This document shows, one piece after another, positions 1 to 57,400 of a stretch of DNA of 64,000 nucleotides. The stretch's first letter is position 1, and each line of letters opens with the position of its first letter. Position numbers and translations under genes: made by a program. The DNA comes from Ramazzottius varieornatus (taxonomy: Eukaryota; Animalia; Tardigrada). The stretch is from positions 558,001 to 622,000 of the forward strand of contig BDGG01000005.1 of NCBI GenBank assembly GCA_001949185.1, written 5' to 3'. Below the pieces are notes generated by a model that saw nothing but the letters and a program-made list of their open reading frames with translations, had not been told where the DNA came from and did no database searches.

Positions 1-740
1 AATCCAGTCAGTAGATCCGTCGGCGTTCACGGGATCCAGCATCTGCCGTTCAAATTCTTCGTTGCAGTCCCCACTTTCCGTAGGCGAATCCGGAGACATG
101 GGGCTAAAAACAATAAGGAAAAAGATGTCTGGCATCGAAATTGAACTCGAAATACTTTTTGGCGAAGCGTTACAGGACGACTACCTGCTACGCTTGCTTT
201 GGTAGAGGCTCTGTCGAGCAGAGTTTTGCAGCGACTCCTTCTGGGCATCGAACAGCAAACGTTCCATGCTCGCGGATTTCTTGGCCTGTGTGGAGTTGTA
301 CTGAGCAGTGGACACCAGCATGGTCTCTTCCGTTTCACGTCCAGATGCCGAGGGGACAGAAAGGACTTCCCATGATTCAGTGGATTCTGCAGAATGGTAA
401 AGGTCCTTTTAAAGTTTGTAAACAGTGAGTTCAAAGAGTGAGCATAACAATAATTCATTCATTCTGCTCGTCTGGATCACGACCAGAAGGTTCATCGCTT
501 CTTTCCAGGATTCCGAGCTTATCATCTCTCCACTTATGCTGTGCGGAAGTTTAATTACAGGCACTAGTTTCTAAACCTTCGGATTCCACCTTCGTTTTCA
601 GATCAACGAGCAACTCTCGCACGAAAAAACAGACGCTATAATAATCATTGCTGTGCTAATAATATCTCGATGGGTTTCTTCGAGTCCCGCTTACCTCTCA
701 TTCGATCCATTTCTGGAGAGGTAGGATGAGATTTCTCCAT
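1..740 (-). CDS. BNIP3: BNIP3/NIX-family mitophagy receptor, 5' part (gene continues beyond left edge); exons 740-695, 386-185, 103-1
   Basis: Spliced translation with consistent GT-AG phases: MEKSHPTSPEMDRMR|ESTESWEVLSVP...SMERLLFDAQKESLQNSARQSLYQSKRS|SPMSPDSPTES...DGSTDWI. It matches BNIP3 hallmarks: S-W-x-x-L LIR, MEK/RxLxDAQxES block, and the start of the DWIWDWSSRP motif at the window edge. Not present in the supplied ORF track. Confidence 0.85.
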
Positions 741-4300: not shown

Positions 4301-7233
4301 GACTGGTTGACGAGTTGGACGGACTGCTGGAAGAAGTGTCTGACCTGTCCCTGTTCTGGTGAGTGCCGTGCTGTGTTTTGCATTCGTATGATGGTCGAAA
4401 AAAGAATTATCGTGTTCTCTTGCAGCTTTTATATTTCGTTCTTCCAAGACCAGTTTTCCTTGTGCCTGGAGTTTCCTGCTCAGACTCGGTGAGTGAACAA
4501 GGAAGTAACTGACTTTGAGTTATCGACTGGCAGTTTCAGTCGAGTTCTTCGTAGGTACATCATTGCCTTTCCGTTGATCTGTGGGCACTTTATGGCAGCT
4601 ACGCATGAGTTGTGTCCGGAGGAACGAGGCAGCTTGGGACACATCTCTATCAATGTAGCCCAGCACTTTCTCGAGGAAATGGGCAGAGAAGCCAAGAACA
4701 TCGTCTTCAGCATTTGCGATGAGCAATGTATGCTGGCGGACCATGTAAGATCATCCGAATGGTGCTTCTGTTCTGCTTACTGCTAACCGCTTCTTGGTTT
4801 TAGGTCCTACCGAAGCATGCTGCGTTCGCGCTGATTACCCAAGCTGCGTCTGAAAGGAAGACGAAGAAGCCGAAGGTTGCCGCCGTTCCGCCCAGCATGC
4901 CCATTCCTGGCCAAGAAAGCTACCGTCGAACTCGGGAAGAACTGACCACGTAAGGATCGATATGAAAAATGAGATCTACGCTAACGTCAGCAGCTTTTAT
5001 CTGTTCTCTCAGGTTCGACAAGTTGCACATGGCACTGACAGAGCTGTGCTACTCCATAAACTACAGCAACACCGTGGTGGTGTGGGAGCATATATTCTGC
5101 CCGAAAGAGTACATGCTGTCGCACATCGAAAGCTCTTTGGGAAAGTAAGCAAGTCTGACCAAGTACCTGCAGACTTTTGATGTCGGGTTTTGTTCGTTCT
5201 TGCCACAAGTCATTTACGATGTGACGGAATGGGCTGTTCCGTAGGGTATTCGTCGATATGCTCACAATGTTCGCACCGGATAACTACATCGTCAAGCCGT
5301 CAGAACTGCTGGTTTGGGTGCGGACTTACATGAACACTCTTCAAACGCTGGAAAACTATGGTGAGTCCGATGCGAGCTATGATAATGAATCGAGCCGGGT
5401 CGTTGTCGCAAGTGGTGCACGTTGTCTGCCAGTAGCGATATAAACGTGCGCCATGTGAAATAACGAGCGGATTCAGTTCATCTACCGGTCTTGCAGACAG
5501 TTGTCAGTCGAATGGACAGATTTTGATGGTCGGTTCTCCTTACAGTTCAAATCGACATGTCTCGGGTGTTTAACACTATCATGCTGCAGCAGACGCAGCC
5601 AGCGGATAGTCTCGGCCAGAAGACCATTACAGCGCTGTATACCACCTGGTACCTGGACACCCTACTAAGGCGAGTCAGCTCCGGTCATGTCGTCTTCTCG
5701 CCACTACAGAAGGCCTTCGTGACAGTCCAGCATGAACCAGGAACTCAACCAAAGCCAGAAGACTACGCGAACCTTGTAGAACTGAGAGCTCTGGCTGAAA
5801 TCATTGGGCCGTATGGGATGAAATACTTTTACGAAACGATCACATGGAATGTGGCGAGCCAAATTGGCGAACTGAAGGTACGATCAGACCATTTTCGATG
5901 ATATCTACCCGCACTTATATTGTTTGTTTGATCCTGTAGAAAATTGTCCTCCAGAATAGCGTTGTGCTAATGGAACTGCGGACGAGCTTTGACAAGCCGG
6001 AAAGCATGCGAGAACTTGCACGTAAACTCCAAAGTAAGTCGGTTTCCGGTTGGTGCACTTGGTCGTGTGTCTGGTCTGCTGGTGGCTTGGTGGTGAGTCT
6101 ATCGCTTATCTAACCTACATGTATTCTTCTTCCTGCTTGATAGAGGCTAAAGCTGATCACGGTAATTCTTCGCTAGCAACCTGTGCTTTGTGATAAATCA
6201 TTGATGTTCATGAAGCTCATTGAACAACTTGGTAATATCGTTTCGTGATTGCTTCATCTACAGATGCGGATAGTCTACTGCATAGGATGATAGTGATCGG
6301 CACCTTGCTGCAGTTCCGGTCATTGTGTCAAGAGCCGCTGAACGATGTAGGTCTTTTTGGTTGTCTTTTCCAAATGTTTGTAGTGAAAGCAAATTCTCTT
6401 CAGACTGTGAAACAGCATGTACCACATCTGTACAGTAGCGTGGAGGATTTCAAAGATTTCAATCAAAGCGGAGATGCGATGATGGTATGGGCGAGTTCAT
6501 TCATCTTTTCCGTTTCTTTACCGGTGGGCGAATTATGGTTGAATGTTTTTCTTGTAGCTGATCAATGAAATGCTGATTTCGGTTGGATTAGAGCCTAAGG
6601 TGGACGCTATCCTGATTAATGCCATCAGGGCCCAAAAGAATGAGAAGAAAGGTGAGTCGACATGTTTATTCGGTAAACCTGTTACTCATTCGCTATATTG
6701 TAAATGTGTTTCCATGTCTGAGGTTTCTCGTTCATTAGAAACTGTATCGGAGGAAGATTACCAGTTCTCGTGTCTGCTGATGGTGTTCCTGGCGGTCTCG
6801 CTGCCTCGTCTAGCCAGGCTGGACGAGGCAGCTTTCAACGTAGCGCTGGAAGCCCACGTCAATAACATGCATTGCTTGGGCAAGGCTGTCAACACTGTCC
6901 TTGGTGAGAGAAAATTTCCATCCGCATTTCTTTCGCGATACATTGTGGAACGTGTTGTCTTTAGGTGCTCTGTTTCACCTGTGCGATCGAGGCGACACTG
7001 CCGACAGGCTTCGCGAGTTCTTGGCTCTTGCGTCTTCCAGTCTCTTGCGTCTAGCCACGGAACAGGACCGAGAGGCCATTAAAAACCGAGACTCCACTTA
7101 CTTGTTACTAGAATACATTGTCAAAGAATCACCCTACCTAACCCAAGATCTCTTTGAGGCATGTTTTCCGCAAGCTTTGTACCGCACAGCCTATCAAGCT
7201 GTACACCGCATCGACCGTCATCTAGCCGTGTGA
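1352..7233 (+). CDS. Hem: Hem/NCKAP1 (Nap1, Kette), WAVE regulatory complex subunit; multi-exon
   Basis: Exon 1 (1352-1456) [35 protein letters not shown]. Later exons carry [48 protein letters not shown]-like [50 protein letters not shown] and [15 protein letters not shown]. Stop TGA at 7231-7233. Confidence 0.95.
5381..5486. mobile_element. Palindromic MITE-like element, copy 1 (Hem intron; diverged)
   Basis: caagtggtgcac...gtgcgccatgtg core with flanking arms. Confidence 0.6.
6144..6161 (+). other. Candidate 18-nt alternative microexon in Hem (adds KAKADH)
   Basis: ctaac branch point (6110-6114), pyrimidine tract, tgc, then tag|AGGCTAAAGCTGATCACG|gtaatt. It is phase 1 to phase 1 and sits in an otherwise oversized intron (6034-6263). 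Confidence 0.6.
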
Positions 7234-45132: not shown

Positions 45133-45140
45133 TATATAAA
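45133..45140 (+). promoter_or_regulatory. TATA box of the BH3-only-like gene
   Basis: TATATAAA about 210 bp upstream of ATG 45346, with Inr-like sequences (cattaca, gcagtt) about 25-40 bp downstream. Confidence 0.5.
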
Positions 45141-45345
45141 CATTACATTCTCTTCGCTGAGCATTACACTTTGCAGTTCACAGTCAACGATCGCTACCTG
45201 TTCACAGATGGCTATCTTCTGTCGGACGTAGCTGAAGCCAGTGTATCATTGTGTAGTATACACTCACGGATCCTTCAACCTTGATCTTACTCCCGATTGC
45301 TGCCGTTTTTGAACTACGTTCCCCAGTACGATTTCATCTGCTGCA

Positions 45346-48300
45346 ATGGTCGATCAACGGTGAGTAAACTTGCATTCATTTCGGGTGGACAGTTTTCATC
45401 ATTCTTGGTCTCGTCTGCTTAGGATCATATCCCAGCTCCCCACCGAGTCATCCGACGCTACTCCGTGGTCCCCTGCTCACACTGACGACAGCGGCTACTA
45501 TTCCCCTCGCGGATCTTCCTCCTGTCCTCCCAACACCCGCTTCTTCCCCGCTGCTAGTGACGCTAACTTCGGACCAAACACTTCGGACGAGGAAGACGAT
45601 GTTTTCACCATGTTGACCAACGAAGAAGCTACACAGTCCCAACCGGAACTCGACATGGATCAACAGTTAGCCGTCGTCAGATTATCCGCATCACCCTTGC
45701 TGCTCGATCGTCCTCGCGCACTAAGCTTCCCCTTGGATGCCTACACCTCAACTGGACATTCCCTCATAATGCGGCGTCATTTGTTGCGTCGATCCTCAGC
45801 GAGCCTCTTTTGGGAGAACTTTCGCCCCCTAGAAGCATTCCAATTGAACCAGTCCGCGGGCAGAAATTCCCCCAATGGTAAGTGTAAGTCTCCTTATTTT
45901 TCAGTCAATGAGTAACGGTAGCAATTAGTCGAGTGAAATTAACTGGTACATCATATTATGATGGCGAAGTGGTATGAGAACATTCACCTGTTGAGGTGTG
46001 TTTATCTAGCGCAATGAGATCAGAGTTTGCCCATTTCGGTCTTCCTGAGTAAATTGTTTCTTTTGCTCCAGAAGAGGCTAGAAGGAATCGAAGAAGGAAT
46101 TACGGGACCACAGAGGAGAAGTAGATATAGTCTTTTTCTGTCTCTCGAAACGTCGAGTCTCGAAAGCTTTCTCAAAGTGGCGGCAGAGAGCGATAAACAC
46201 TGTAATTAAGAGCACTCCATTAACAGCGACGATTTCTTCCCTGTTGCGGCGTTTAGGGATCATCGGAAGTCAAGTAGCTCTAGTTACACCTGTTGTTTTG
46301 TTGGATGTCTCGGTTTTGCCCAAACCAGTTGTTTTCCTGGCCGGACACCGCAACATACCAGAAGAGAACGAGAAGGAAGTTTCTATGATGGACATGCTAA
46401 TCACTCTGATCTTGGTTGAGGCCTCTATTACAGTATAAAGCAGCTGGTCAAATTTCATGTCTTCGACCACTAGTGTTGATAGTGGCGCACTTCGATGTCG
46501 TAAGAGCAGATAGATCATAACAAGTTTTGCAACAGCCAAATACTGTATCAACGGACAAAGCGAGAAGATCGCATTTTTAGCCCAGAAGACGAGACGGTCA
46601 TTTTGATAATATTATTCCACAGTAGAGGAACACGTTAGAGAGACTTGGCGCCAGCTGTCAATCGCCGGTCGAAGTGCACGTGCGGCCGTCATAATTGCTC
46701 GCTCCAATGTCCACTCACTTGTCCACTTGTCTTCACCCCTAGAAACCTTCTAAAATCATCCACCTGGCGATGTATTTTTTCAGATTATGTTGAAACCTTT
46801 TTTATCGTTTCTCTTGGTTTTTGCAGGTGATGATATCGATGGCGAGGTTCCCGACATGGGTCCTTCCCCTCCCAAAAAGATCGAACTGGTTCGCGCACCC
46901 GAAGATGAGCCGCTCAGCGATCATGGAGCTTCCTCGACCGCGTCTCACTCGCCCGACATGTTTCGAGACGAAGAAGCCAGCTGGGACCTGCCCGACATCG
47001 TCACTTCCGGTCTGCGCCCACGAAGAAAGCGAACCCTGTCGGAGGCCGACGCGACGCGGATGAAGAAGCTCGAGTACCGCATCGCCTGTCGACTGGCCCA
47101 GATTGGCGACGAATTTGACCTGCAAATGTTCCAGACTACGGTAAGCACTGCAACTATTTTTCGATGCGCAAATATCTTCTCTTCGGTCATCAGTTGGTGG
47201 GCGGAAGCTGTTTGTTTATCCCCAAACCGTTCTTAGGATGACAACAAAATGCCGCTGTCGTTACAAAAGTCATATCCCTCGCTTGACATCACAAACATAG
47301 AACCACCTTCCATACTGACTGCTGAGCGACTCCATAATATAAAGATGACGTCTGAAAAGCCGCACTTTTACGGCTTGCAAGTTGAAACGTCGTCTCGGTT
47401 GAGTCTCTTCGTTTGTCAAGAGTGAAGTGTTTGCTTAGCAGTTACACATTTGCAACACGTGTTGCGAAGTCTTTAAACTGAATTTGAACGGCGTTCGAAG
47501 GGCTGTTAACGCTTAGTCAAAAGAGGGAGTTGCCCATCGTCGATGGTAATCAGGAGCAAGTCAAGCACATCGGAAATGTCACAATTTAGTTTATTTACTC
47601 CGCTTCACCCCGCTTCGAAGCAGTATCCCGCTTTGATGCGCTTCGATGTGCTTTGTTAAGCAGGATATTTGATTAACTGACAATTTTGTACACTGAGCGG
47701 GTCTCTTTTATGGGAGAGACGTTACTGCAAGGTGGCACAGTCAGTAAAAACGGAAGGGCCGATAATGCGTTTCGTCGTAATTAACATTAGTATTAGTATT
47801 TGTATGATCGCTAGTTGTTTGGGATCCCTTTTCACTCTCATCATGTTAACACCGAAGTGACGATTGCGATGGTATTCTAACAGCGCACAATAGCACACAA
47901 AACAATTGGATAATTAGATCAGAAGGATTTCCGGAAGAGCGCCTCCCCGTTATAAAGGTTTATTAAGAGGCAGTTTGGGTTAAGTGAACGGATATAAATT
48001 AGTGCGGGATGGCAGAACAGGACATGAACAGTGTGAGGGAAGACTCGATATTTTGGGCGAAAGATGGGGCCTATCAAAACTTGTTCTTTTGTTTGGAGAC
48101 ATAATGTGATTACGGTGGAAAATGTTTGACTAAGGGAAAGAAGAGATGTCAACTATGAAGAGTCAAGGCAGATATGAGATTGATGCCCTTAAAAGGTCCC
48201 TCGCGATCGGTCGTATGTCCGCACCTGCGTTGACTTATGATTATCAAGTGGCTGATTCCATCTCTGATTATACCTTTCAAGTGCAAATTTACCCAGTCGA

Positions 48301-49012
48301 ATAAACAGAGTGAAGATGTTCAAAGTCGTGGGCTTGACGCGTGCTGAAGTCCTCTAATGACGGATTTTAAAATCAATTTCAAACATGTTATCACAAGTCG
48401 TCCGACATACACGTTTCGCCAAACTGCTCTGTGCTGCTCAATCAAAACTCCAATTCGGAACTTTTGTCGAAAAGCAAACTCAGCTTTTCAAGCCTGCGCC
48501 ATACTGAGACCGTTCCCGAACTTAAACTGCTCCAGTCCGACTCAATGGATAATACAAAGTGAACGTACTTCGCAATATTGTGCAAACTGTGAGCAAATTT
48601 TCGGACCGTTGGAAATTTGTCTGTAATTTGTTAGGTTACTGTGAAAAGCTGCCGGCACAATACCGGTACGTAGTTTTGTGTCCAAGTTGAGCTTGAGGCG
48701 ATCTTAGAGTACGGGACGCTCAAAGCGTCTGGGAAATTCAGAGAATTTCAACGGCCAAAGAAATGGCTTCTCTTTCCGCACACCTTTGCGAAAGTTCAAG
48801 GTCTATTGAACCCACTGATTGAATCGTTCGATATTGAAAATTTTCTTTTTTCCTTTCAGGATGCTATTGATGGACAAGGAAGCAGAGTACTAGGATGGAT
48901 TGGGTCCAGTTCGTCGGCTGTGGTGACTCGATTTTGGTATTACATCACACGTCAAGGAGGGCCGCCACCTGTCGGATCGTCTCGTCAAAGATCCCATTCC
49001 ATGGCTGAGTGA
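45346..49012 (+). CDS. Putative BH3-only pro-apoptotic protein (Bim/Bad-like features), 311 aa; exons 45346-45359, 45423-45877, 46827-47140, 48860-49012
   Basis: Four exons join in frame with strong GT-AG sites (936 nt). The protein is mostly Ser/Pro/acidic and low in complexity. It has one BH3 motif IACRLAQIGDEFD (47081-47119), no recognisable BH1/BH2, DSGYYS, and three RxRxxS sites. Confidence 0.75.
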
Positions 49013-54403: not shown

Positions 54404-57400
54404 ATGTCCGGTGCGAGCAACTCCGGGAAGGATCGACCAGCATCCCAAGAGAAGGACAAGCAAGACGCCTCGGAACTCCAAAAACGGATTGATGATCGTA
54501 AGTTCTTGATCCGTTGCGAGTAAGTGTGTAACCTAACTTATTCTGGTTGTGATGACAGTGTTGAAGCAGAAGGCAGCTCTGGAAAAGATGGACGATAAAG
54601 GCACAGCCCGATTTTCTGCTGCACAAAAGCTGAGGAATGACGCTGATCAGATCAAGCGCGATATGGGTAGGACAGTCTCTGGCATTTCTTCTGATATACG
54701 AGCCAGAATGCAGCAGCAGCTCGATGGGATGATAGATTCCGCCTTGGAGACCATCAACTCCATGAGAGGTGGACAGCAAGGCATACCTAGCACAAGACAG
54801 AACATTTCCCTGCTTCACAGTACTCCCATCGGTAACGGGTACGGAGTATCACCCTTCGGTAGACGAACAGCGAATGTCAGAGATGTTGCGGGAGAATCGC
54901 AAGAGAATGCTATGCAGGTAAGATACGGTGGTCCTTTCGTTGATGACAGCTTCCTTCTTCGGACTACATTGTGTAAATTGTAGGAGCTGCTACGAGCGAT
55001 GGGCGAAATTAAAGAGTTGCAGTTGAAGAAGGACGCCGACTTAAACTCGAAACTGGACAGATTCGATGCCAGACTGAGCGATCTGAACGGGCGTTTTGAT
55101 AGTCTCGAGAATAAGGTGGGAAGACAGCGAATGGAGAGTCCAGAGCCTGGTCGGAAGCAGCTACAGACCATGGGACAAGATGTCTCTCTCATCAAAGAGC
55201 AGCTGACATCCGTTCAAGGCCGATTCGACGGTATCAACAACCGCATCGACAACTTGCTGGTTCAGATGAATCAACGACCAACCTCTCCAGTGGCACCTCA
55301 AGTCATCCAGGTTCACCTGACTGGACAGATTCCCCAACAGATTGGAGGTAAGAAATCTTCAACAACTCGGTGAGCTCGTTTTTCCCAAGAGGCGCACGCT
55401 TTCAGCCAATAAACTGGGAGCCTGCGCTTCTTGGAAAAGAGTCTTGTCGAGCTTGTTTGCCGAGCTCATTAGACTGAAGAGGTGAAAGACATTTTGTTTT
55501 TCTCGTAGGTCCTTCTTCGCAGATGATGGAAGGCACCTCGTCCAAAGTTTCCAGTCATCCAGAGAAGGAAAAGGTTTGTGACGCCTATAATGCGAAGTGT
55601 TAAATAACGGCATTGTGATTCGCGTTATCTTCCAGGTTGTCCACCAGAAGGCTCCAGTTCCGATCAAGTCTGAACCTCAGGACCAGAAGAACACCACATC
55701 CCAAGTTGCGCCTTCCGCTACAGCTTCGTCGACTTCCACCAGCAGTAACCCGATGGTTGTGAACGTTCCCAAGACGCAGCAACGAGATAGTTCAGCCTTG
55801 GACCGGCTGATGAACACGGCACCTTGTTCGCCTTCCGTCGTCCCTGAGGTCAAGGGTACTGGAACGGTGAGCTGGGGTGCTTCTACTACGCATCCTTCTA
55901 AACCAACTCCATCACAAGCTGCTCGGCCTCAGTCGCCGTCTTCGTCCATGCCACCTCTACAAAGCAGCCAGCCTTCTTCTGTCCCGTCTTCTGCAACTGC
56001 CGACAAGCCTAGACTGTTCGAGCAATTTGCAGGTTTGTACTGAATACCCATTCCATCTTACTAATCAGACTGACTAGTCGAAACAGAAAACTGTCGGCGA
56101 ACAATGTCGACTGACTTTTCCTTAGTGGCGCACATGTTCAGTGTTACACGCTGGACACGCGCGGCACTTGGAGAAACGATCTTGTCAAGTTTGGTTGCCC
56201 AGATCTCAAACCTCAAAAACCTTTCGGTATAAGAATAAGGTCAGCTTCTCAGGTTTTGGGTGATGGTAGGTTATGGAATTATTGTTGCAGGTTTTGGAGC
56301 TCCTACGCAGTCTAGTCAGCAGTCCACACCGATGAAAGACCAGAAGCCGGGCGTCAGCTCCCTCTTTGGTGGCGCCGCAGCGTCGTCGGCGCCCTTCTCT
56401 TCGCTGTTCGGTGGTTTGCCGTCTAGCTCTATTGGTGGTAACACCAGTTTCGCCGCTCTGGCTTCGAGTGTCCCCAGTAGTGGGTTCAACAAGAGCGACA
56501 AGGCTTTCGCGGGTACTGGTGCGAAGCTCTTTGGATCGTCAACCACAAAGCCAGCCACTAAACCAGCCGAAGGTGACGATGAAGAAGGAGAAGTGGAGGA
56601 GAGTCCCGAAGGTTTTGTTCCTAACGTGGACTATCAGCCCATTGTCACCCTCCCCGAAGTGAAAGTGACGACTGGCGAAGAAGACTGGGACAACAAGTTC
56701 AGTGAGCGAGCCAAGCTGTTTAGGTTTGAGAAGTCCACACAGGAATGGAAGGAACGCGGGATTGGTGATATGGCTATTCAGCAGCAGAAAGGTAGACAAT
56801 CAATAGTAGAAAACAGAAGATGCGGAGCGTGGGCAGATGCTTTGAACCAGATCGTTTTCCCAAGTGGCGCACACTCTCAGCCAATAACAATGAAAACGTG
56901 CGCCACTCGAGATAACGATCTGGTTCGATTCATCTACCATCTCCCATGTAATTCCAGATCAAATTTGCTGAAAATAATTTTGATGATCGATGTGGATTTT
57001 CTGATGGCTGGGTTTTCGTTACAGGTGGAAAGCTTGTTTTCCGTATCCTGATGCGGTACGAAAAGACGCTGAAGATTTGTGCCAACCATCGCATTCATCC
57101 CAGCATGAACCTCCAGCCGTTTTCCGAGACCGATAAAAAGACAGTTCGATGGACCGCGCAAGACTTTGCCGACAACGAACCGAAGATGGAAATGCTGGCG
57201 GTCCGCTTCAAGACTCCAGAGATCGCTGAGAAGTTCAAGCAAATTTTCGATGACGCCAAGAAGCAGACCGAAGCTGGTGGCGACTCAGGTACTGTAAACG
57301 CCATCCAGTCGCCTAACCGAGATGAGAATTATGGGTCAACATCTGTGCGTTTTTCTTTGTAGGTGACAAGAAGCCACCTCCACCTCCCGAACCTACAAAA

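What the first reader, a model, noticed from the sequence alone, without database searches (positions are those of the whole stretch)
45346..49012. Candidate Bim/Bad-like BH3-only apoptosis initiator in an invertebrate
Seen: four exons splice in frame to a 311-aa, disorder-prone protein. Its only recognisable folded-type element is LEYRIACRLAQIGDEFD (47081-47119), and there is no BH1/BH2. Established: L-x-x-I-G-D-E-F-[ND], with hydrophobic residues at the h1-h4 positions, is the canonical BH3 signature (Bim IAQELRRIGDEFN, Bik LALRLACIGDEMD). BH3-only proteins are unstructured and are missed by similarity searches, and few are known in ecdysozoans (e.g. nematode EGL-1/CED-13). Inference: this is a previously unrecognised BH3-only gene, which would imply a vertebrate-style Bcl-2 sensing layer in this lineage. 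The amphipathic or aromatic C-terminal segment (VLGWIGSSSSAVVTRFWYYITR) could be a membrane-targeting tail.
Basis: partly seen in the sequence, partly recalled or inferred. Interest (0 to 1): 0.88.

Follow-up and report, generated by a model that had tools for sequence, protein, structure and literature searches.

The report
Tardigrade BH3-only cell-death gene
This tardigrade gene, filed publicly only as a 'hypothetical protein', encodes a floppy protein whose one conserved helix is a textbook BH3 'death signal' predicted to dock into the animal's own Bcl-2 protein, so tardigrades probably have the same three-part suicide switch as vertebrates.

Summary
Exons 45346-45359, 45423-45877, 46827-47140 and 48860-49012 (+), all GT-AG, join to 311 aa. 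That product is identical to the public protein GAU98962.1, RvY_10031 of Ramazzottius varieornatus, named only 'hypothetical protein'.

The protein is predicted disordered apart from a helix at residues 229-262 and a weaker one at 271-291. It has no BH1/BH2. The motif IACRLAQIGDEF fits the BH3 consensus and is the only strict match in the window's six frames.

New here:
- An inverted paralogue, RvY_10019, lies 53 kb away, beside a Bcl-2/Bcl-xL-like gene (RvY_10015) and a BNIP3-like gene.
- Relatives exist in two other unnamed sources. The 22-residue BH3 block is the longest identical run at 52% overall identity.
- Non-converted paralogue exons give dN/dS 0.22-0.34.
- The BH3 half of exon 3 and patches of intron 3 are 100% identical between copies, which indicates gene conversion.
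- The BH3 peptide is predicted to dock in the RvY_10015 groove, score 0.79 against best control 0.09.

No RNA-seq check was possible. Membership of Bim, Bmf or Bad is not shown. No paper found describes a tardigrade BH3-only gene. The scan's first readers had already flagged this stretch and the paralogue.

The parts
45133..45140 (+). TATA-like box (TATATAAA) about 205 nt upstream of the annotated ATG; possible core promoter
   Evidence: Read directly. Inference only; no transcript data.
45346..45359 (+). Exon 1 coding part (ATG GTC GAT CAA CG), donor GTGAGT. It supplies the start codon of the public model.
   Evidence: The paralogue and the orthologue start at an ATG in exon 2 that is ATA here. 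This start is therefore derived and unverified.
45423..45877 (+). Exon 2: disordered, acidic N-terminal region with conserved blocks RGSSSCPP, PRALSFP and MRRHL..R.S..FWE
   Evidence: Between paralogues dN/dS is 0.34 at dS about 1.0.
45715..45732 (+). RALSFP (residues 103-108), an R-x-x-S-x-P site of 14-3-3 mode-1 type
   Evidence: Identical in P0003 but RASNFP in the paralogue. Calling it a 14-3-3 site is inference.
46827..47140 (+). Exon 3: the BH3 exon (phase-1 acceptor, phase-0 donor)
   Evidence: The same exon borders appear in relative P0002, which reads into introns on both sides, and in P0003, which is joined.
47021..47041 (+). Basic cluster RRKRTLS (residues 222-228), an R-x-R-x-x-S basophilic-kinase consensus just upstream of the BH3
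   Evidence: R223, R225, T226 and S228 are invariant in the three full-length proteins. The kinase assignment is inference.
47069..47134 (+). BH3 helix core LEYRIACRLAQIGDEFDLQMFQ (residues 238-259). h1-h4 are I242, L246, I249, F253; small residue G250; acidic D251.
   Evidence: 22/22 identical in P0003 at 52% overall identity; 4 of 100,000 shuffles reach such a run. All the named residues lie in the predicted interface.
48860..49012 (+). Exon 4 with stop codon: conserved C-terminal region
   Evidence: Between paralogues dN/dS is 0.27.
48887..48949 (+). Predicted amphipathic aromatic helix (residues 271-291, VLGWIGSSSSAVVTRFWYYIT)
   Evidence: AF2 helix 271-291 at low confidence. Mean hydropathy is 0.29 with a high hydrophobic moment, so it is not of transmembrane grade.
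46920..47275 (.). Tract 100% identical in DNA to paralogue RvY_10019. It covers the BH3 half of exon 3 and the first 135 nt of intron 3; read as gene conversion.
47453..47632 (.). Second near-identical tract inside intron 3 (178 of 180 positions)
   Evidence: The intron sequence occurs only at the two paralogues in the genome.
47992..48411 (.). Third near-identical tract inside intron 3 (about 413 of 420 positions)
   Evidence: No Rfam match in the region.

Best explanation
RvY_10031 is one of two paralogous BH3-only genes of the tardigrade Ramazzottius varieornatus. The protein is intrinsically disordered. On a death signal, its single conserved amphipathic helix (residues about 236-259) would insert into the hydrophobic groove of the Bcl-2/Bcl-xL-like protein RvY_10015, and possibly of the Bak-like protein. 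I242, L246, I249 and F253 would fill the four pockets, and D251 would pair with the Arg of the BH1 motif NWGR. This would neutralise the survival protein, free or activate the Bak-like effector, and lead through Apaf-1-like and caspase genes to apoptosis. Shown by computation: the gene model, its conservation and selection, the absence of a Bcl-2 fold, and the predicted docking mode. Inferred: actual binding, killing, the conserved R-x-R-x-x-S and R-x-x-S-x-P sites acting as phospho-switches, and the C-terminal amphipathic helix acting in membrane or partner binding.
For: The gene model is in frame with GT-AG borders and is identical to the public 311-aa protein. A paralogue, RvY_10019, has 68% identity, and there are relatives P0003 (324 aa), P0002 and P0004. 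In the relative, P0002 reads into unrelated sequence at both exon-3 borders, while P0003, on 1.5-kb contigs, joins the exons at the same points; this is indirect evidence of splicing. The BH3 block is the longest identical run, 22 aa, with 4 of 100,000 shuffles reaching it, and its core is invariant in all five sequences. dN/dS is 0.22-0.34 in the parts not homogenised by conversion. AF2 gives pLDDT 40 with helices only at 229-262 and 271-291. The only Pfam and PDB similarities are BH3 ligands at the motif: BID, Bik, Bim, EGL-1 and designed Bcl-xL/Mcl-1 binders, all sub-threshold. The complex test scored 0.79 against a best control of 0.09. Runs agree in at least 85% of contacts and partner pLDDT is at least 67. 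That mark was reached by 51 of 78 solved complexes and 2 of 108 mismatched pairs. Interface residues are h1-h4, G250 and D251 against R221 of NWGR. Pathway partners are present: a Bcl-2/xL-like gene, a Bak-like gene, caspases and an NB-ARC locus. Protein-language-model neighbours are BMF, Bim and Bik clusters (a lead only).
Against: No Pfam or PDB hit is individually significant. The complex predictor may pass from memory of the many solved BH3-groove complexes, and peptides were not part of its calibration. The 100% paralogue identity over the BH3 comes from gene conversion and says nothing about selection. The ancestral start codon of this copy is ATA, so the N-terminus rests on an unverified 14-nt exon. 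The IGDE-type motif also matches artificial HEAT-like repeat proteins in the PDB, so the short motif alone is not specific. By my own rough calculation, about five chance matches to a loose BH3 pattern are expected per proteome.
Confidence: 0.66

Rival explanations
1. The BH3 is real and binds Bcl-2-family proteins, but the protein's main job is not killing. It could be a Beclin- or BNIP3-style regulator of autophagy, mitophagy or mitochondrial dynamics, or a stress-tolerance factor that uses Bcl-2 as an anchor.
For: The paralogue sits between a Bcl-2-like gene and a BNIP3-like gene. Several conserved blocks outside the BH3 (RGSSSCPP, MRRHL..FWE, LGWIGS, ITRQGG) imply further partners. The literature treats BH3 motifs as short linear motifs that arise in unrelated proteins (PMC10107002).
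Against: The motif fits the strict canonical signature, not a loose one. The architecture is that of classical BH3-only killers: disordered, BH3 near the C-terminus, then an amphipathic helix. The nearest language-model neighbours are BMF, Bim and Bik rather than Beclin or BNIP3.
Confidence: 0.14
2. The motif is a look-alike. The conserved helix binds some other partner, and there is no functional link to the Bcl-2 family.
For: All sequence hits to BH3 families are below threshold. HEAT-like repeats share the ALGxIGDE pattern. No homologue outside tardigrade-like sources was found.
Against: The predicted docking is specific against three controls and reproduces the canonical Asp-Arg pair and four-pocket pattern. 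Every BH3-defining position is invariant in five sequences. The protein has one copy of the motif in a disordered chain, not a repeat array.
Confidence: 0.1
3. This particular copy, RvY_10031, is a redundant or decaying duplicate, and the function is carried by RvY_10019 beside the Bcl-2 gene. The ancestral ATG is lost and the annotated start is an artefact.
For: ATG has become ATA at the position where the paralogue and the orthologue start. An alternative weak donor upstream of the annotated ATG aligns with a donor candidate in the paralogue. A uORF lies at 45208. There is no RNA evidence.
Against: The frame is open over all 311 codons. dN/dS of 0.22-0.34 against the paralogue at dS about 1 means both copies have stayed under constraint. 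Splice sites are intact. An in-frame ATG in exon 1 or Met68 could start translation, and either would keep the BH3.
Confidence: 0.1
4. It is a mis-annotated multi-domain Bcl-2 family gene whose BH1/BH2 exons were missed.
For: None beyond the BH3 itself.
Against: The model ends in a conserved stop, and the C-terminus is conserved in paralogue and orthologue. The genome-wide PF00452 scan finds Bcl-2 domains only at C5:542681 and C15:767163, plus one weak and apparently spurious site, and none near this gene. A profile comparison with RvY_10015 shows no similarity beyond the BH3.
Confidence: 0.01

Closest known systems
Vertebrate Bim (BCL2L11) and Bmf
   Same: Both are disordered proteins with a BH3 near the C-terminus, followed after an intron by a short hydrophobic or aromatic helix. 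The BH3 core I-A-x-x-L-x-x-I-G-D-E-F is the Bim pattern (from my own knowledge of Bim's IAQELRRIGDEFN). Bim BH3 peptides are among the few PDB hits. BMF and Bim clusters are the nearest named language-model neighbours, even for residues 1-225 alone, though at low scores.
   Different: There is no significant Pfam match to PF08945 (E=2.5), and none at all to PF06773 or PF15185. There is no conserved dynein-light-chain TQT motif: TQS here, absent in the paralogue and orthologue. The protein is longer, at 311 aa. The C-terminal helix is S-rich and amphipathic and is followed by a 20-residue polar tail.
BID BH3 region
   Same: It is the best single sequence match. Chain 2voi_B, EEIIHNIARHLAQIGDEMDHNI, aligns with KKLEYRIACRLAQIGDEFDLQM, and the Pfam BID model hits at the BH3 with E=0.1.
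   Different: BID is a folded helical bundle activated by caspase cleavage. This protein is predicted disordered, and the similarity stops at the motif.
Nematode EGL-1 / CED-13 and Drosophila Sayonara (the known ecdysozoan BH3-only proteins)
   Same: All are ecdysozoan proteins whose only Bcl-2-family feature is a BH3. EGL-1 appears among the PDB hits.
   Different: EGL-1 and CED-13 are about 90-aa proteins that free CED-4 from CED-9. Sayonara is a coiled-coil protein whose BH3 arose within Diptera (PMC10107002). There is no sequence relation to either. The tardigrade motif is much closer to the vertebrate consensus, and the genome also has a Bak-like effector, which suggests a vertebrate-style route through the mitochondrial outer membrane.
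Candidate Bim/Bad/Bmf-like proteins of echinoderms (reported 350-373 aa) and schistosome BH3-only proteins
   Same: They are long, disordered invertebrate proteins recognised only by a BH3, proposed to complete a three-part Bcl-2 system (PMC8998228).
   Different: They come from other phyla, and no sequence link was found here. That survey reports ecdysozoan BH3-only proteins only in some nematodes and does not mention tardigrades.

Membership tests
BH3-only proteins (functional class) | BH3 consensus: hydrophobic h1-h4 spaced i, i+4, i+7, i+11, a small residue before an invariant Asp, Leu at h2 | tested here: met
   I242, L246, I249, G250, D251 and F253. The strict pattern matches once in the window, and every one of these positions is invariant in five sequences.
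BH3-only proteins (functional class) | No BH1, BH2 or BH4 and no Bcl-2 helical-bundle fold | tested here: met
   No PF00452 hit in the protein or near the gene. AF2 gives mean pLDDT 40 with only two helices. hhalign against RvY_10015 gives probability 0.3%.
BH3-only proteins (functional class) | The BH3 helix binds the groove of a multi-domain Bcl-2 family protein | tested here: inconclusive
   Prediction only: score 0.79 against best control 0.09, with a D251-R221 (NWGR) contact. The model supports binding but does not show it, and it may draw on memory of solved complexes.
BH3-only proteins (functional class) | BH3-dependent induction of apoptosis | not testable with these tools
   Needs cell or animal assays.
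Bim/Bmf family (Pfam PF08945, PF06773, PF15185) | Match to the family profiles above the gathering score | tested here: not met
   PF08945 scores 8.5 bits, E=2.5, against a cut-off of 25. PF06773 and PF15185 give no hit at E<=10.
Bim/Bmf family (Pfam PF08945, PF06773, PF15185) | Dynein-light-chain binding motif [KR]-x-T-Q-T upstream of the BH3 (feature recalled from my own knowledge) | tested here: not met
   Only ATQSQ at residues 75-79, and it is not conserved in P0007 or P0003.
Bim/Bmf family (Pfam PF08945, PF06773, PF15185) | Hydrophobic C-terminal membrane-binding segment encoded by the exon after the BH3 exon | tested here: inconclusive
   A conserved helix at 271-291 lies on its own exon, but its mean hydropathy is only 0.29; it is amphipathic, not of transmembrane grade.
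Bad (Pfam PF10514) | Profile match, and 14-3-3 phospho-sites that gate the BH3 | tested here: not met
   No PF10514 hit. RALSFP is conserved in the orthologue but not in the paralogue, and RRKRTLS is conserved in the three full-length proteins. Phosphorylation is untested.
BID (Pfam PF06393) | Full-length helical-bundle domain | tested here: not met
   The hit covers only 29 residues at the BH3, 12.6 bits against a cut-off of 25. The protein is predicted disordered.

The most novel reading that the evidence does not exclude
The tardigrade genes are surviving members of an ancient Bim/Bmf-type BH3-only lineage that also persists, unrecognised, in arthropods as 'hypothetical protein' clusters; those clusters are the nearest language-model neighbours (score 0.89). 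If so, the ecdysozoan ancestor had a vertebrate-style three-part Bcl-2 switch, and the odd systems of flies and worms are secondary losses.
Probability: 0.2. Interest if true: 0.8.

Novelty: new member of a known kind. Interest (0 to 1): 0.6.

Why it matters
Canonical BH3-only sensors are documented in vertebrates, a few deuterostome and flatworm lineages, cnidarians, some nematodes, and Diptera (a derived motif). A 2022 survey found none elsewhere in Ecdysozoa (PMC8998228). No paper in the searched library links tardigrades with BH3-only proteins.

A near-perfect Bim/Bid-type BH3 in a conserved tardigrade gene, beside a Bcl-2/xL-like gene and in a genome that also has a Bak-like gene, points to a complete sensor, guardian and effector switch in a panarthropod relative. 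It gives a directly testable handle: a peptide, two point mutants and a defined partner. That handle bears on how animals famous for surviving radiation and desiccation decide whether damaged cells die.

The patchy gene conversion that keeps the BH3 exon of the two inverted copies identical is a small extra curiosity.

Tried and rejected
- **Source DNA of relatives.** The source organisms and DNA of P0002, P0003 and P0004 are therefore unknown, and cross-species dN/dS could not be computed.
- **Exhaustive phmmer of the BH3 exon** against 1.84 billion proteins gave only this gene, P0002, P0003, P0004 and one low-complexity 1430-aa hit.
- **Word-seeded searches** with the full protein and with a three-sequence profile found nothing beyond P0001, P0007 and P0003.
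- **Metagenome scan** with the exon-3 alignment: 360 pattern matches, none confirmed.
- **Rfam** on the gene and its introns found nothing.
- **Dispersed-repeat explanation** for the identical intron tracts is rejected; the intron occurs only at the two paralogues.
- **Third Bcl-2-like hit** on contig C2 looks spurious.
- **Tail-anchor reading** of the C-terminus is rejected on hydropathy.
- **Origin by truncation** of the neighbouring Bcl-2 gene has no support.
- **Joined exons.** Searches of the spliced model were made exon by exon by reference. No typed joined sequence was sent to any search. Exons were joined only in a local script to check the frame. Full-length analyses used the public protein P0001, which a search returned.
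Full report
**Organism and locus.** The window is G000:C5:558001-622000 of a 55.8-Mb, 200-contig genome. The encoded protein is identical to GAU98962.1, 'hypothetical protein RvY_10031 [Ramazzottius varieornatus]'. The animal is therefore a tardigrade.

**Checking the observation.**
- Exons 45346-45359, 45423-45877, 46827-47140 and 48860-49012 on the + strand have GT-AG borders with good polypyrimidine tracts. They join to 936 nt, 311 codons plus a stop.
- I searched the model exon by exon by reference. The only join was in a local script to check the frame.
- The exhaustive protein search returned a public 311-aa protein, P0001, identical to that join. All full-length analyses used P0001.
The longer 17-mer it quotes starts at 47069.
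- Pfam finds no domain. The only hits are sub-threshold matches of BH3-ligand families at the motif: BID E=0.1, Bclx_interact E=2.5, and Bik E=0.011 in relative P0004.
- AlphaFold2 with a three-sequence alignment gives mean pLDDT 40 and helices only at 229-262 and 271-291. The ESM Atlas holds a model with pLDDT 0.45.
- A strict BH3 pattern occurs once in the six-frame translation of the 64 kb, at this site.

**Relatives.**
- A six-frame search of the same genome found a second copy of the BH3 exon at C5:551574-551885 on the opposite strand, 53 kb upstream. It belongs to RvY_10019 (P0007; 316 aa, 68% identity) and has the same intron positions and phases.
- Reading exon 3 against 1.84 billion representative proteins found only three more sequences:
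  - P0003, 324 aa, on two 1.5-kb Logan contigs;
  - P0002, 150 aa, on a 4.3-kb ENA contig, with an exon 3 identical to that of P0003;
  - P0004, 96 aa, more divergent.
- P0002 runs into unrelated sequence exactly at both exon-3 borders. P0003 continues there into exon-2-like and exon-4-like sequence. P0003 is thus a spliced message of a related species with the same exon borders. This is indirect support for the splicing pattern.
- Nothing was found outside this small group by a profile search or in metagenome contigs.

**Conservation.**
- Between P0001 and P0003 (52% identity) the longest identical run is the 22-mer LEYRIACRLAQIGDEFDLQMFQ. Only 4 of 100,000 shuffles of the identity pattern give a run that long.
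- In all five sequences the invariant columns include E239, Y240, I242, A243, C244, R245, L246, A247, I249, G250, D251, E252, F253 and D254.
- Shorter conserved blocks are RGSSSCPP, PRALSFP, MRRHL, DLPDI, LGWIGS, ITRQGG and RSHS.

**Selection and gene conversion between the two Ramazzottius copies.**
- Exon 2 has dS about 1.0 and dN/dS 0.34.
- The first 34 codons of exon 3 have dS 0.93 and dN/dS 0.22.
- Exon 4 has dN/dS 0.27. Both copies have therefore been kept under purifying selection since an old duplication.
- The last 70 codons of exon 3 and the first 135 nt of intron 3 (46920-47275) have no nucleotide difference at all.
- Two further tracts inside intron 3 (47453-47632 and 47992-48411) are almost identical, against a background of 45-85% identity.
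- The intron occurs nowhere else in the genome and has no Rfam match.
- I read this as patchy gene conversion between the inverted copies. It means the paralogue identity over the BH3 is not itself evidence of selection; the cross-species conservation is.

**Partners and predicted mechanism.**
- A genome-wide PF00452 scan finds two clear Bcl-2-family loci.
  - C5:542681-543022 is RvY_10015 (P0008, 318 aa). Its closest solved relatives are Bcl-2 and Bcl-xL. It lies about 7 kb from the paralogue RvY_10019.
  - C15:767163-767483 is closest to Bak.
- A BNIP3-like exon lies at window 1-378.
- Caspase loci and one NB-ARC (Apaf-1-like) locus exist.
- I tested one pair: RvY_10015 residues 86-290 with RvY_10031 residues 222-266.
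  - The score was 0.79 in all three runs against a best control of 0.09.
  - Runs agreed in at least 85% of contacts, and partner pLDDT was at least 67.
  - The mark was reached by 51 of 78 solved complexes and 2 of 108 mismatched pairs.
  - The interface uses I242, L246, I249 and F253, with G250 and D251. The lowest-error contact is D251 with R221, the Arg of the BH1 motif NWGR. This is the canonical BH3-in-groove geometry.
  - The tool warns that such a pass may come from memory of solved complexes, and that peptides were not calibrated. It shows likeness to the canonical complex, not binding.

**What it is and is not.**
- It meets the sequence and structural definition of a BH3-only protein.
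- It is not shown to be a member of Bim, Bmf, Bad or BID:
  - the profiles do not match;
  - the TQS at residues 76-78 is not a conserved dynein-light-chain motif;
  - RALSFP is not kept in the paralogue;
  - the similarity to BID stops at the motif.
- Language-model neighbours are arthropod 'hypothetical protein' clusters (0.89), then BMF, Bim and Bik clusters (0.75-0.86). Residues 1-225 alone again give BMF and Bim_N clusters, at 0.76. All these scores are in the 'lead only' range, and I could not fetch the arthropod sequences.
- The proposed C-terminal 'tail' is a conserved, predicted amphipathic aromatic helix followed by a 20-residue polar end. No 19-residue window of the protein exceeds a mean hydropathy of 0.8, so it is not a classical tail anchor.

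**A caveat specific to this copy.**
- The paralogue and the orthologue start at an ATG in exon 2. In RvY_10031 that codon is ATA.
- The public model starts instead at an ATG in a 14-nt exon-1 segment spliced in frame.
- An alternative weak donor upstream of that ATG aligns with a donor candidate in the paralogue.
- A 7-codon uORF starts at 45208.
- The N-terminus is therefore unverified. Met68 would still give a BH3-bearing product.

**Literature.**
- No paper in the searched library joins tardigrades and BH3-only proteins, or names RvY_10031, RvY_10019 or RvY_10015.
- A 2022 survey of metazoan Bcl-2 families reports BH3-only proteins in Ecdysozoa only for some nematodes. It lists long disordered candidates in echinoderms (PMC8998228).
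- The Drosophila protein Sayonara has a BH3 that arose within Diptera (PMC10107002).

**Earlier notes of this scan.** First readers had already flagged this same stretch (s1-795363), the paralogue (s1-808272) and the Bcl-2 / BH3-only / BNIP3 cluster (s1-808266). I checked the paralogue and the cluster myself.

**Verdict.** This is a real, conserved gene that very probably encodes a BH3-only protein, one of a pair in this tardigrade. It is a new member of a known kind, publicly present but unnamed. Binding and killing remain to be shown.

Noticed in passing
window 1-378 (-) = G000:C5:557986-558378: A BNIP3-like exon (PF06553, 28.5 bits, above the cut-off) at the very start of the window. Together with RvY_10015 (Bcl-2/xL-like, C5:542.7k) and RvY_10019 (BH3-only, C5:549.7-553.4k) it forms a 16-kb cluster of mitochondrial life-or-death genes.
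   Followed up: partly
window 46920-47275, 47453-47632, 47992-48411: Tracts of 100% or near-100% DNA identity with the inverted paralogue 53 kb away, set in 45-85% background identity. They look like a mosaic of gene conversion. The two long intronic tracts could instead be conserved regulatory elements.
   Followed up: partly
window 45208-45231 (+) and 45133-45140 (+): A 7-codon upstream ORF (ATG GCT ATC TTC TGT CGG ACG TAG) and a TATA-like box lie in the presumed 5' region of the gene.
   Followed up: no
G000:C5:660971-661654 and 662608-663264 (-), about 40 kb beyond the window's end: Two neighbouring caspase-domain loci (PF00656) sit on the same contig as the Bcl-2 and BH3-only genes.
   Followed up: no
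window 6570-7079 (+) and 56260-57048 (+): Exon-sized open frames match Nckap1 (E=1e-16) and a RanBP1 domain (E=2e-12). They are ordinary neighbours unrelated to the finding.
   Followed up: no
L005 = G000:C15:765663-768983 (-): The Bak-like gene has a roughly 50-residue insertion between its NWGR (BH1) and GGW (BH2) motifs within one exon, which is unusually long for the family.
   Followed up: no
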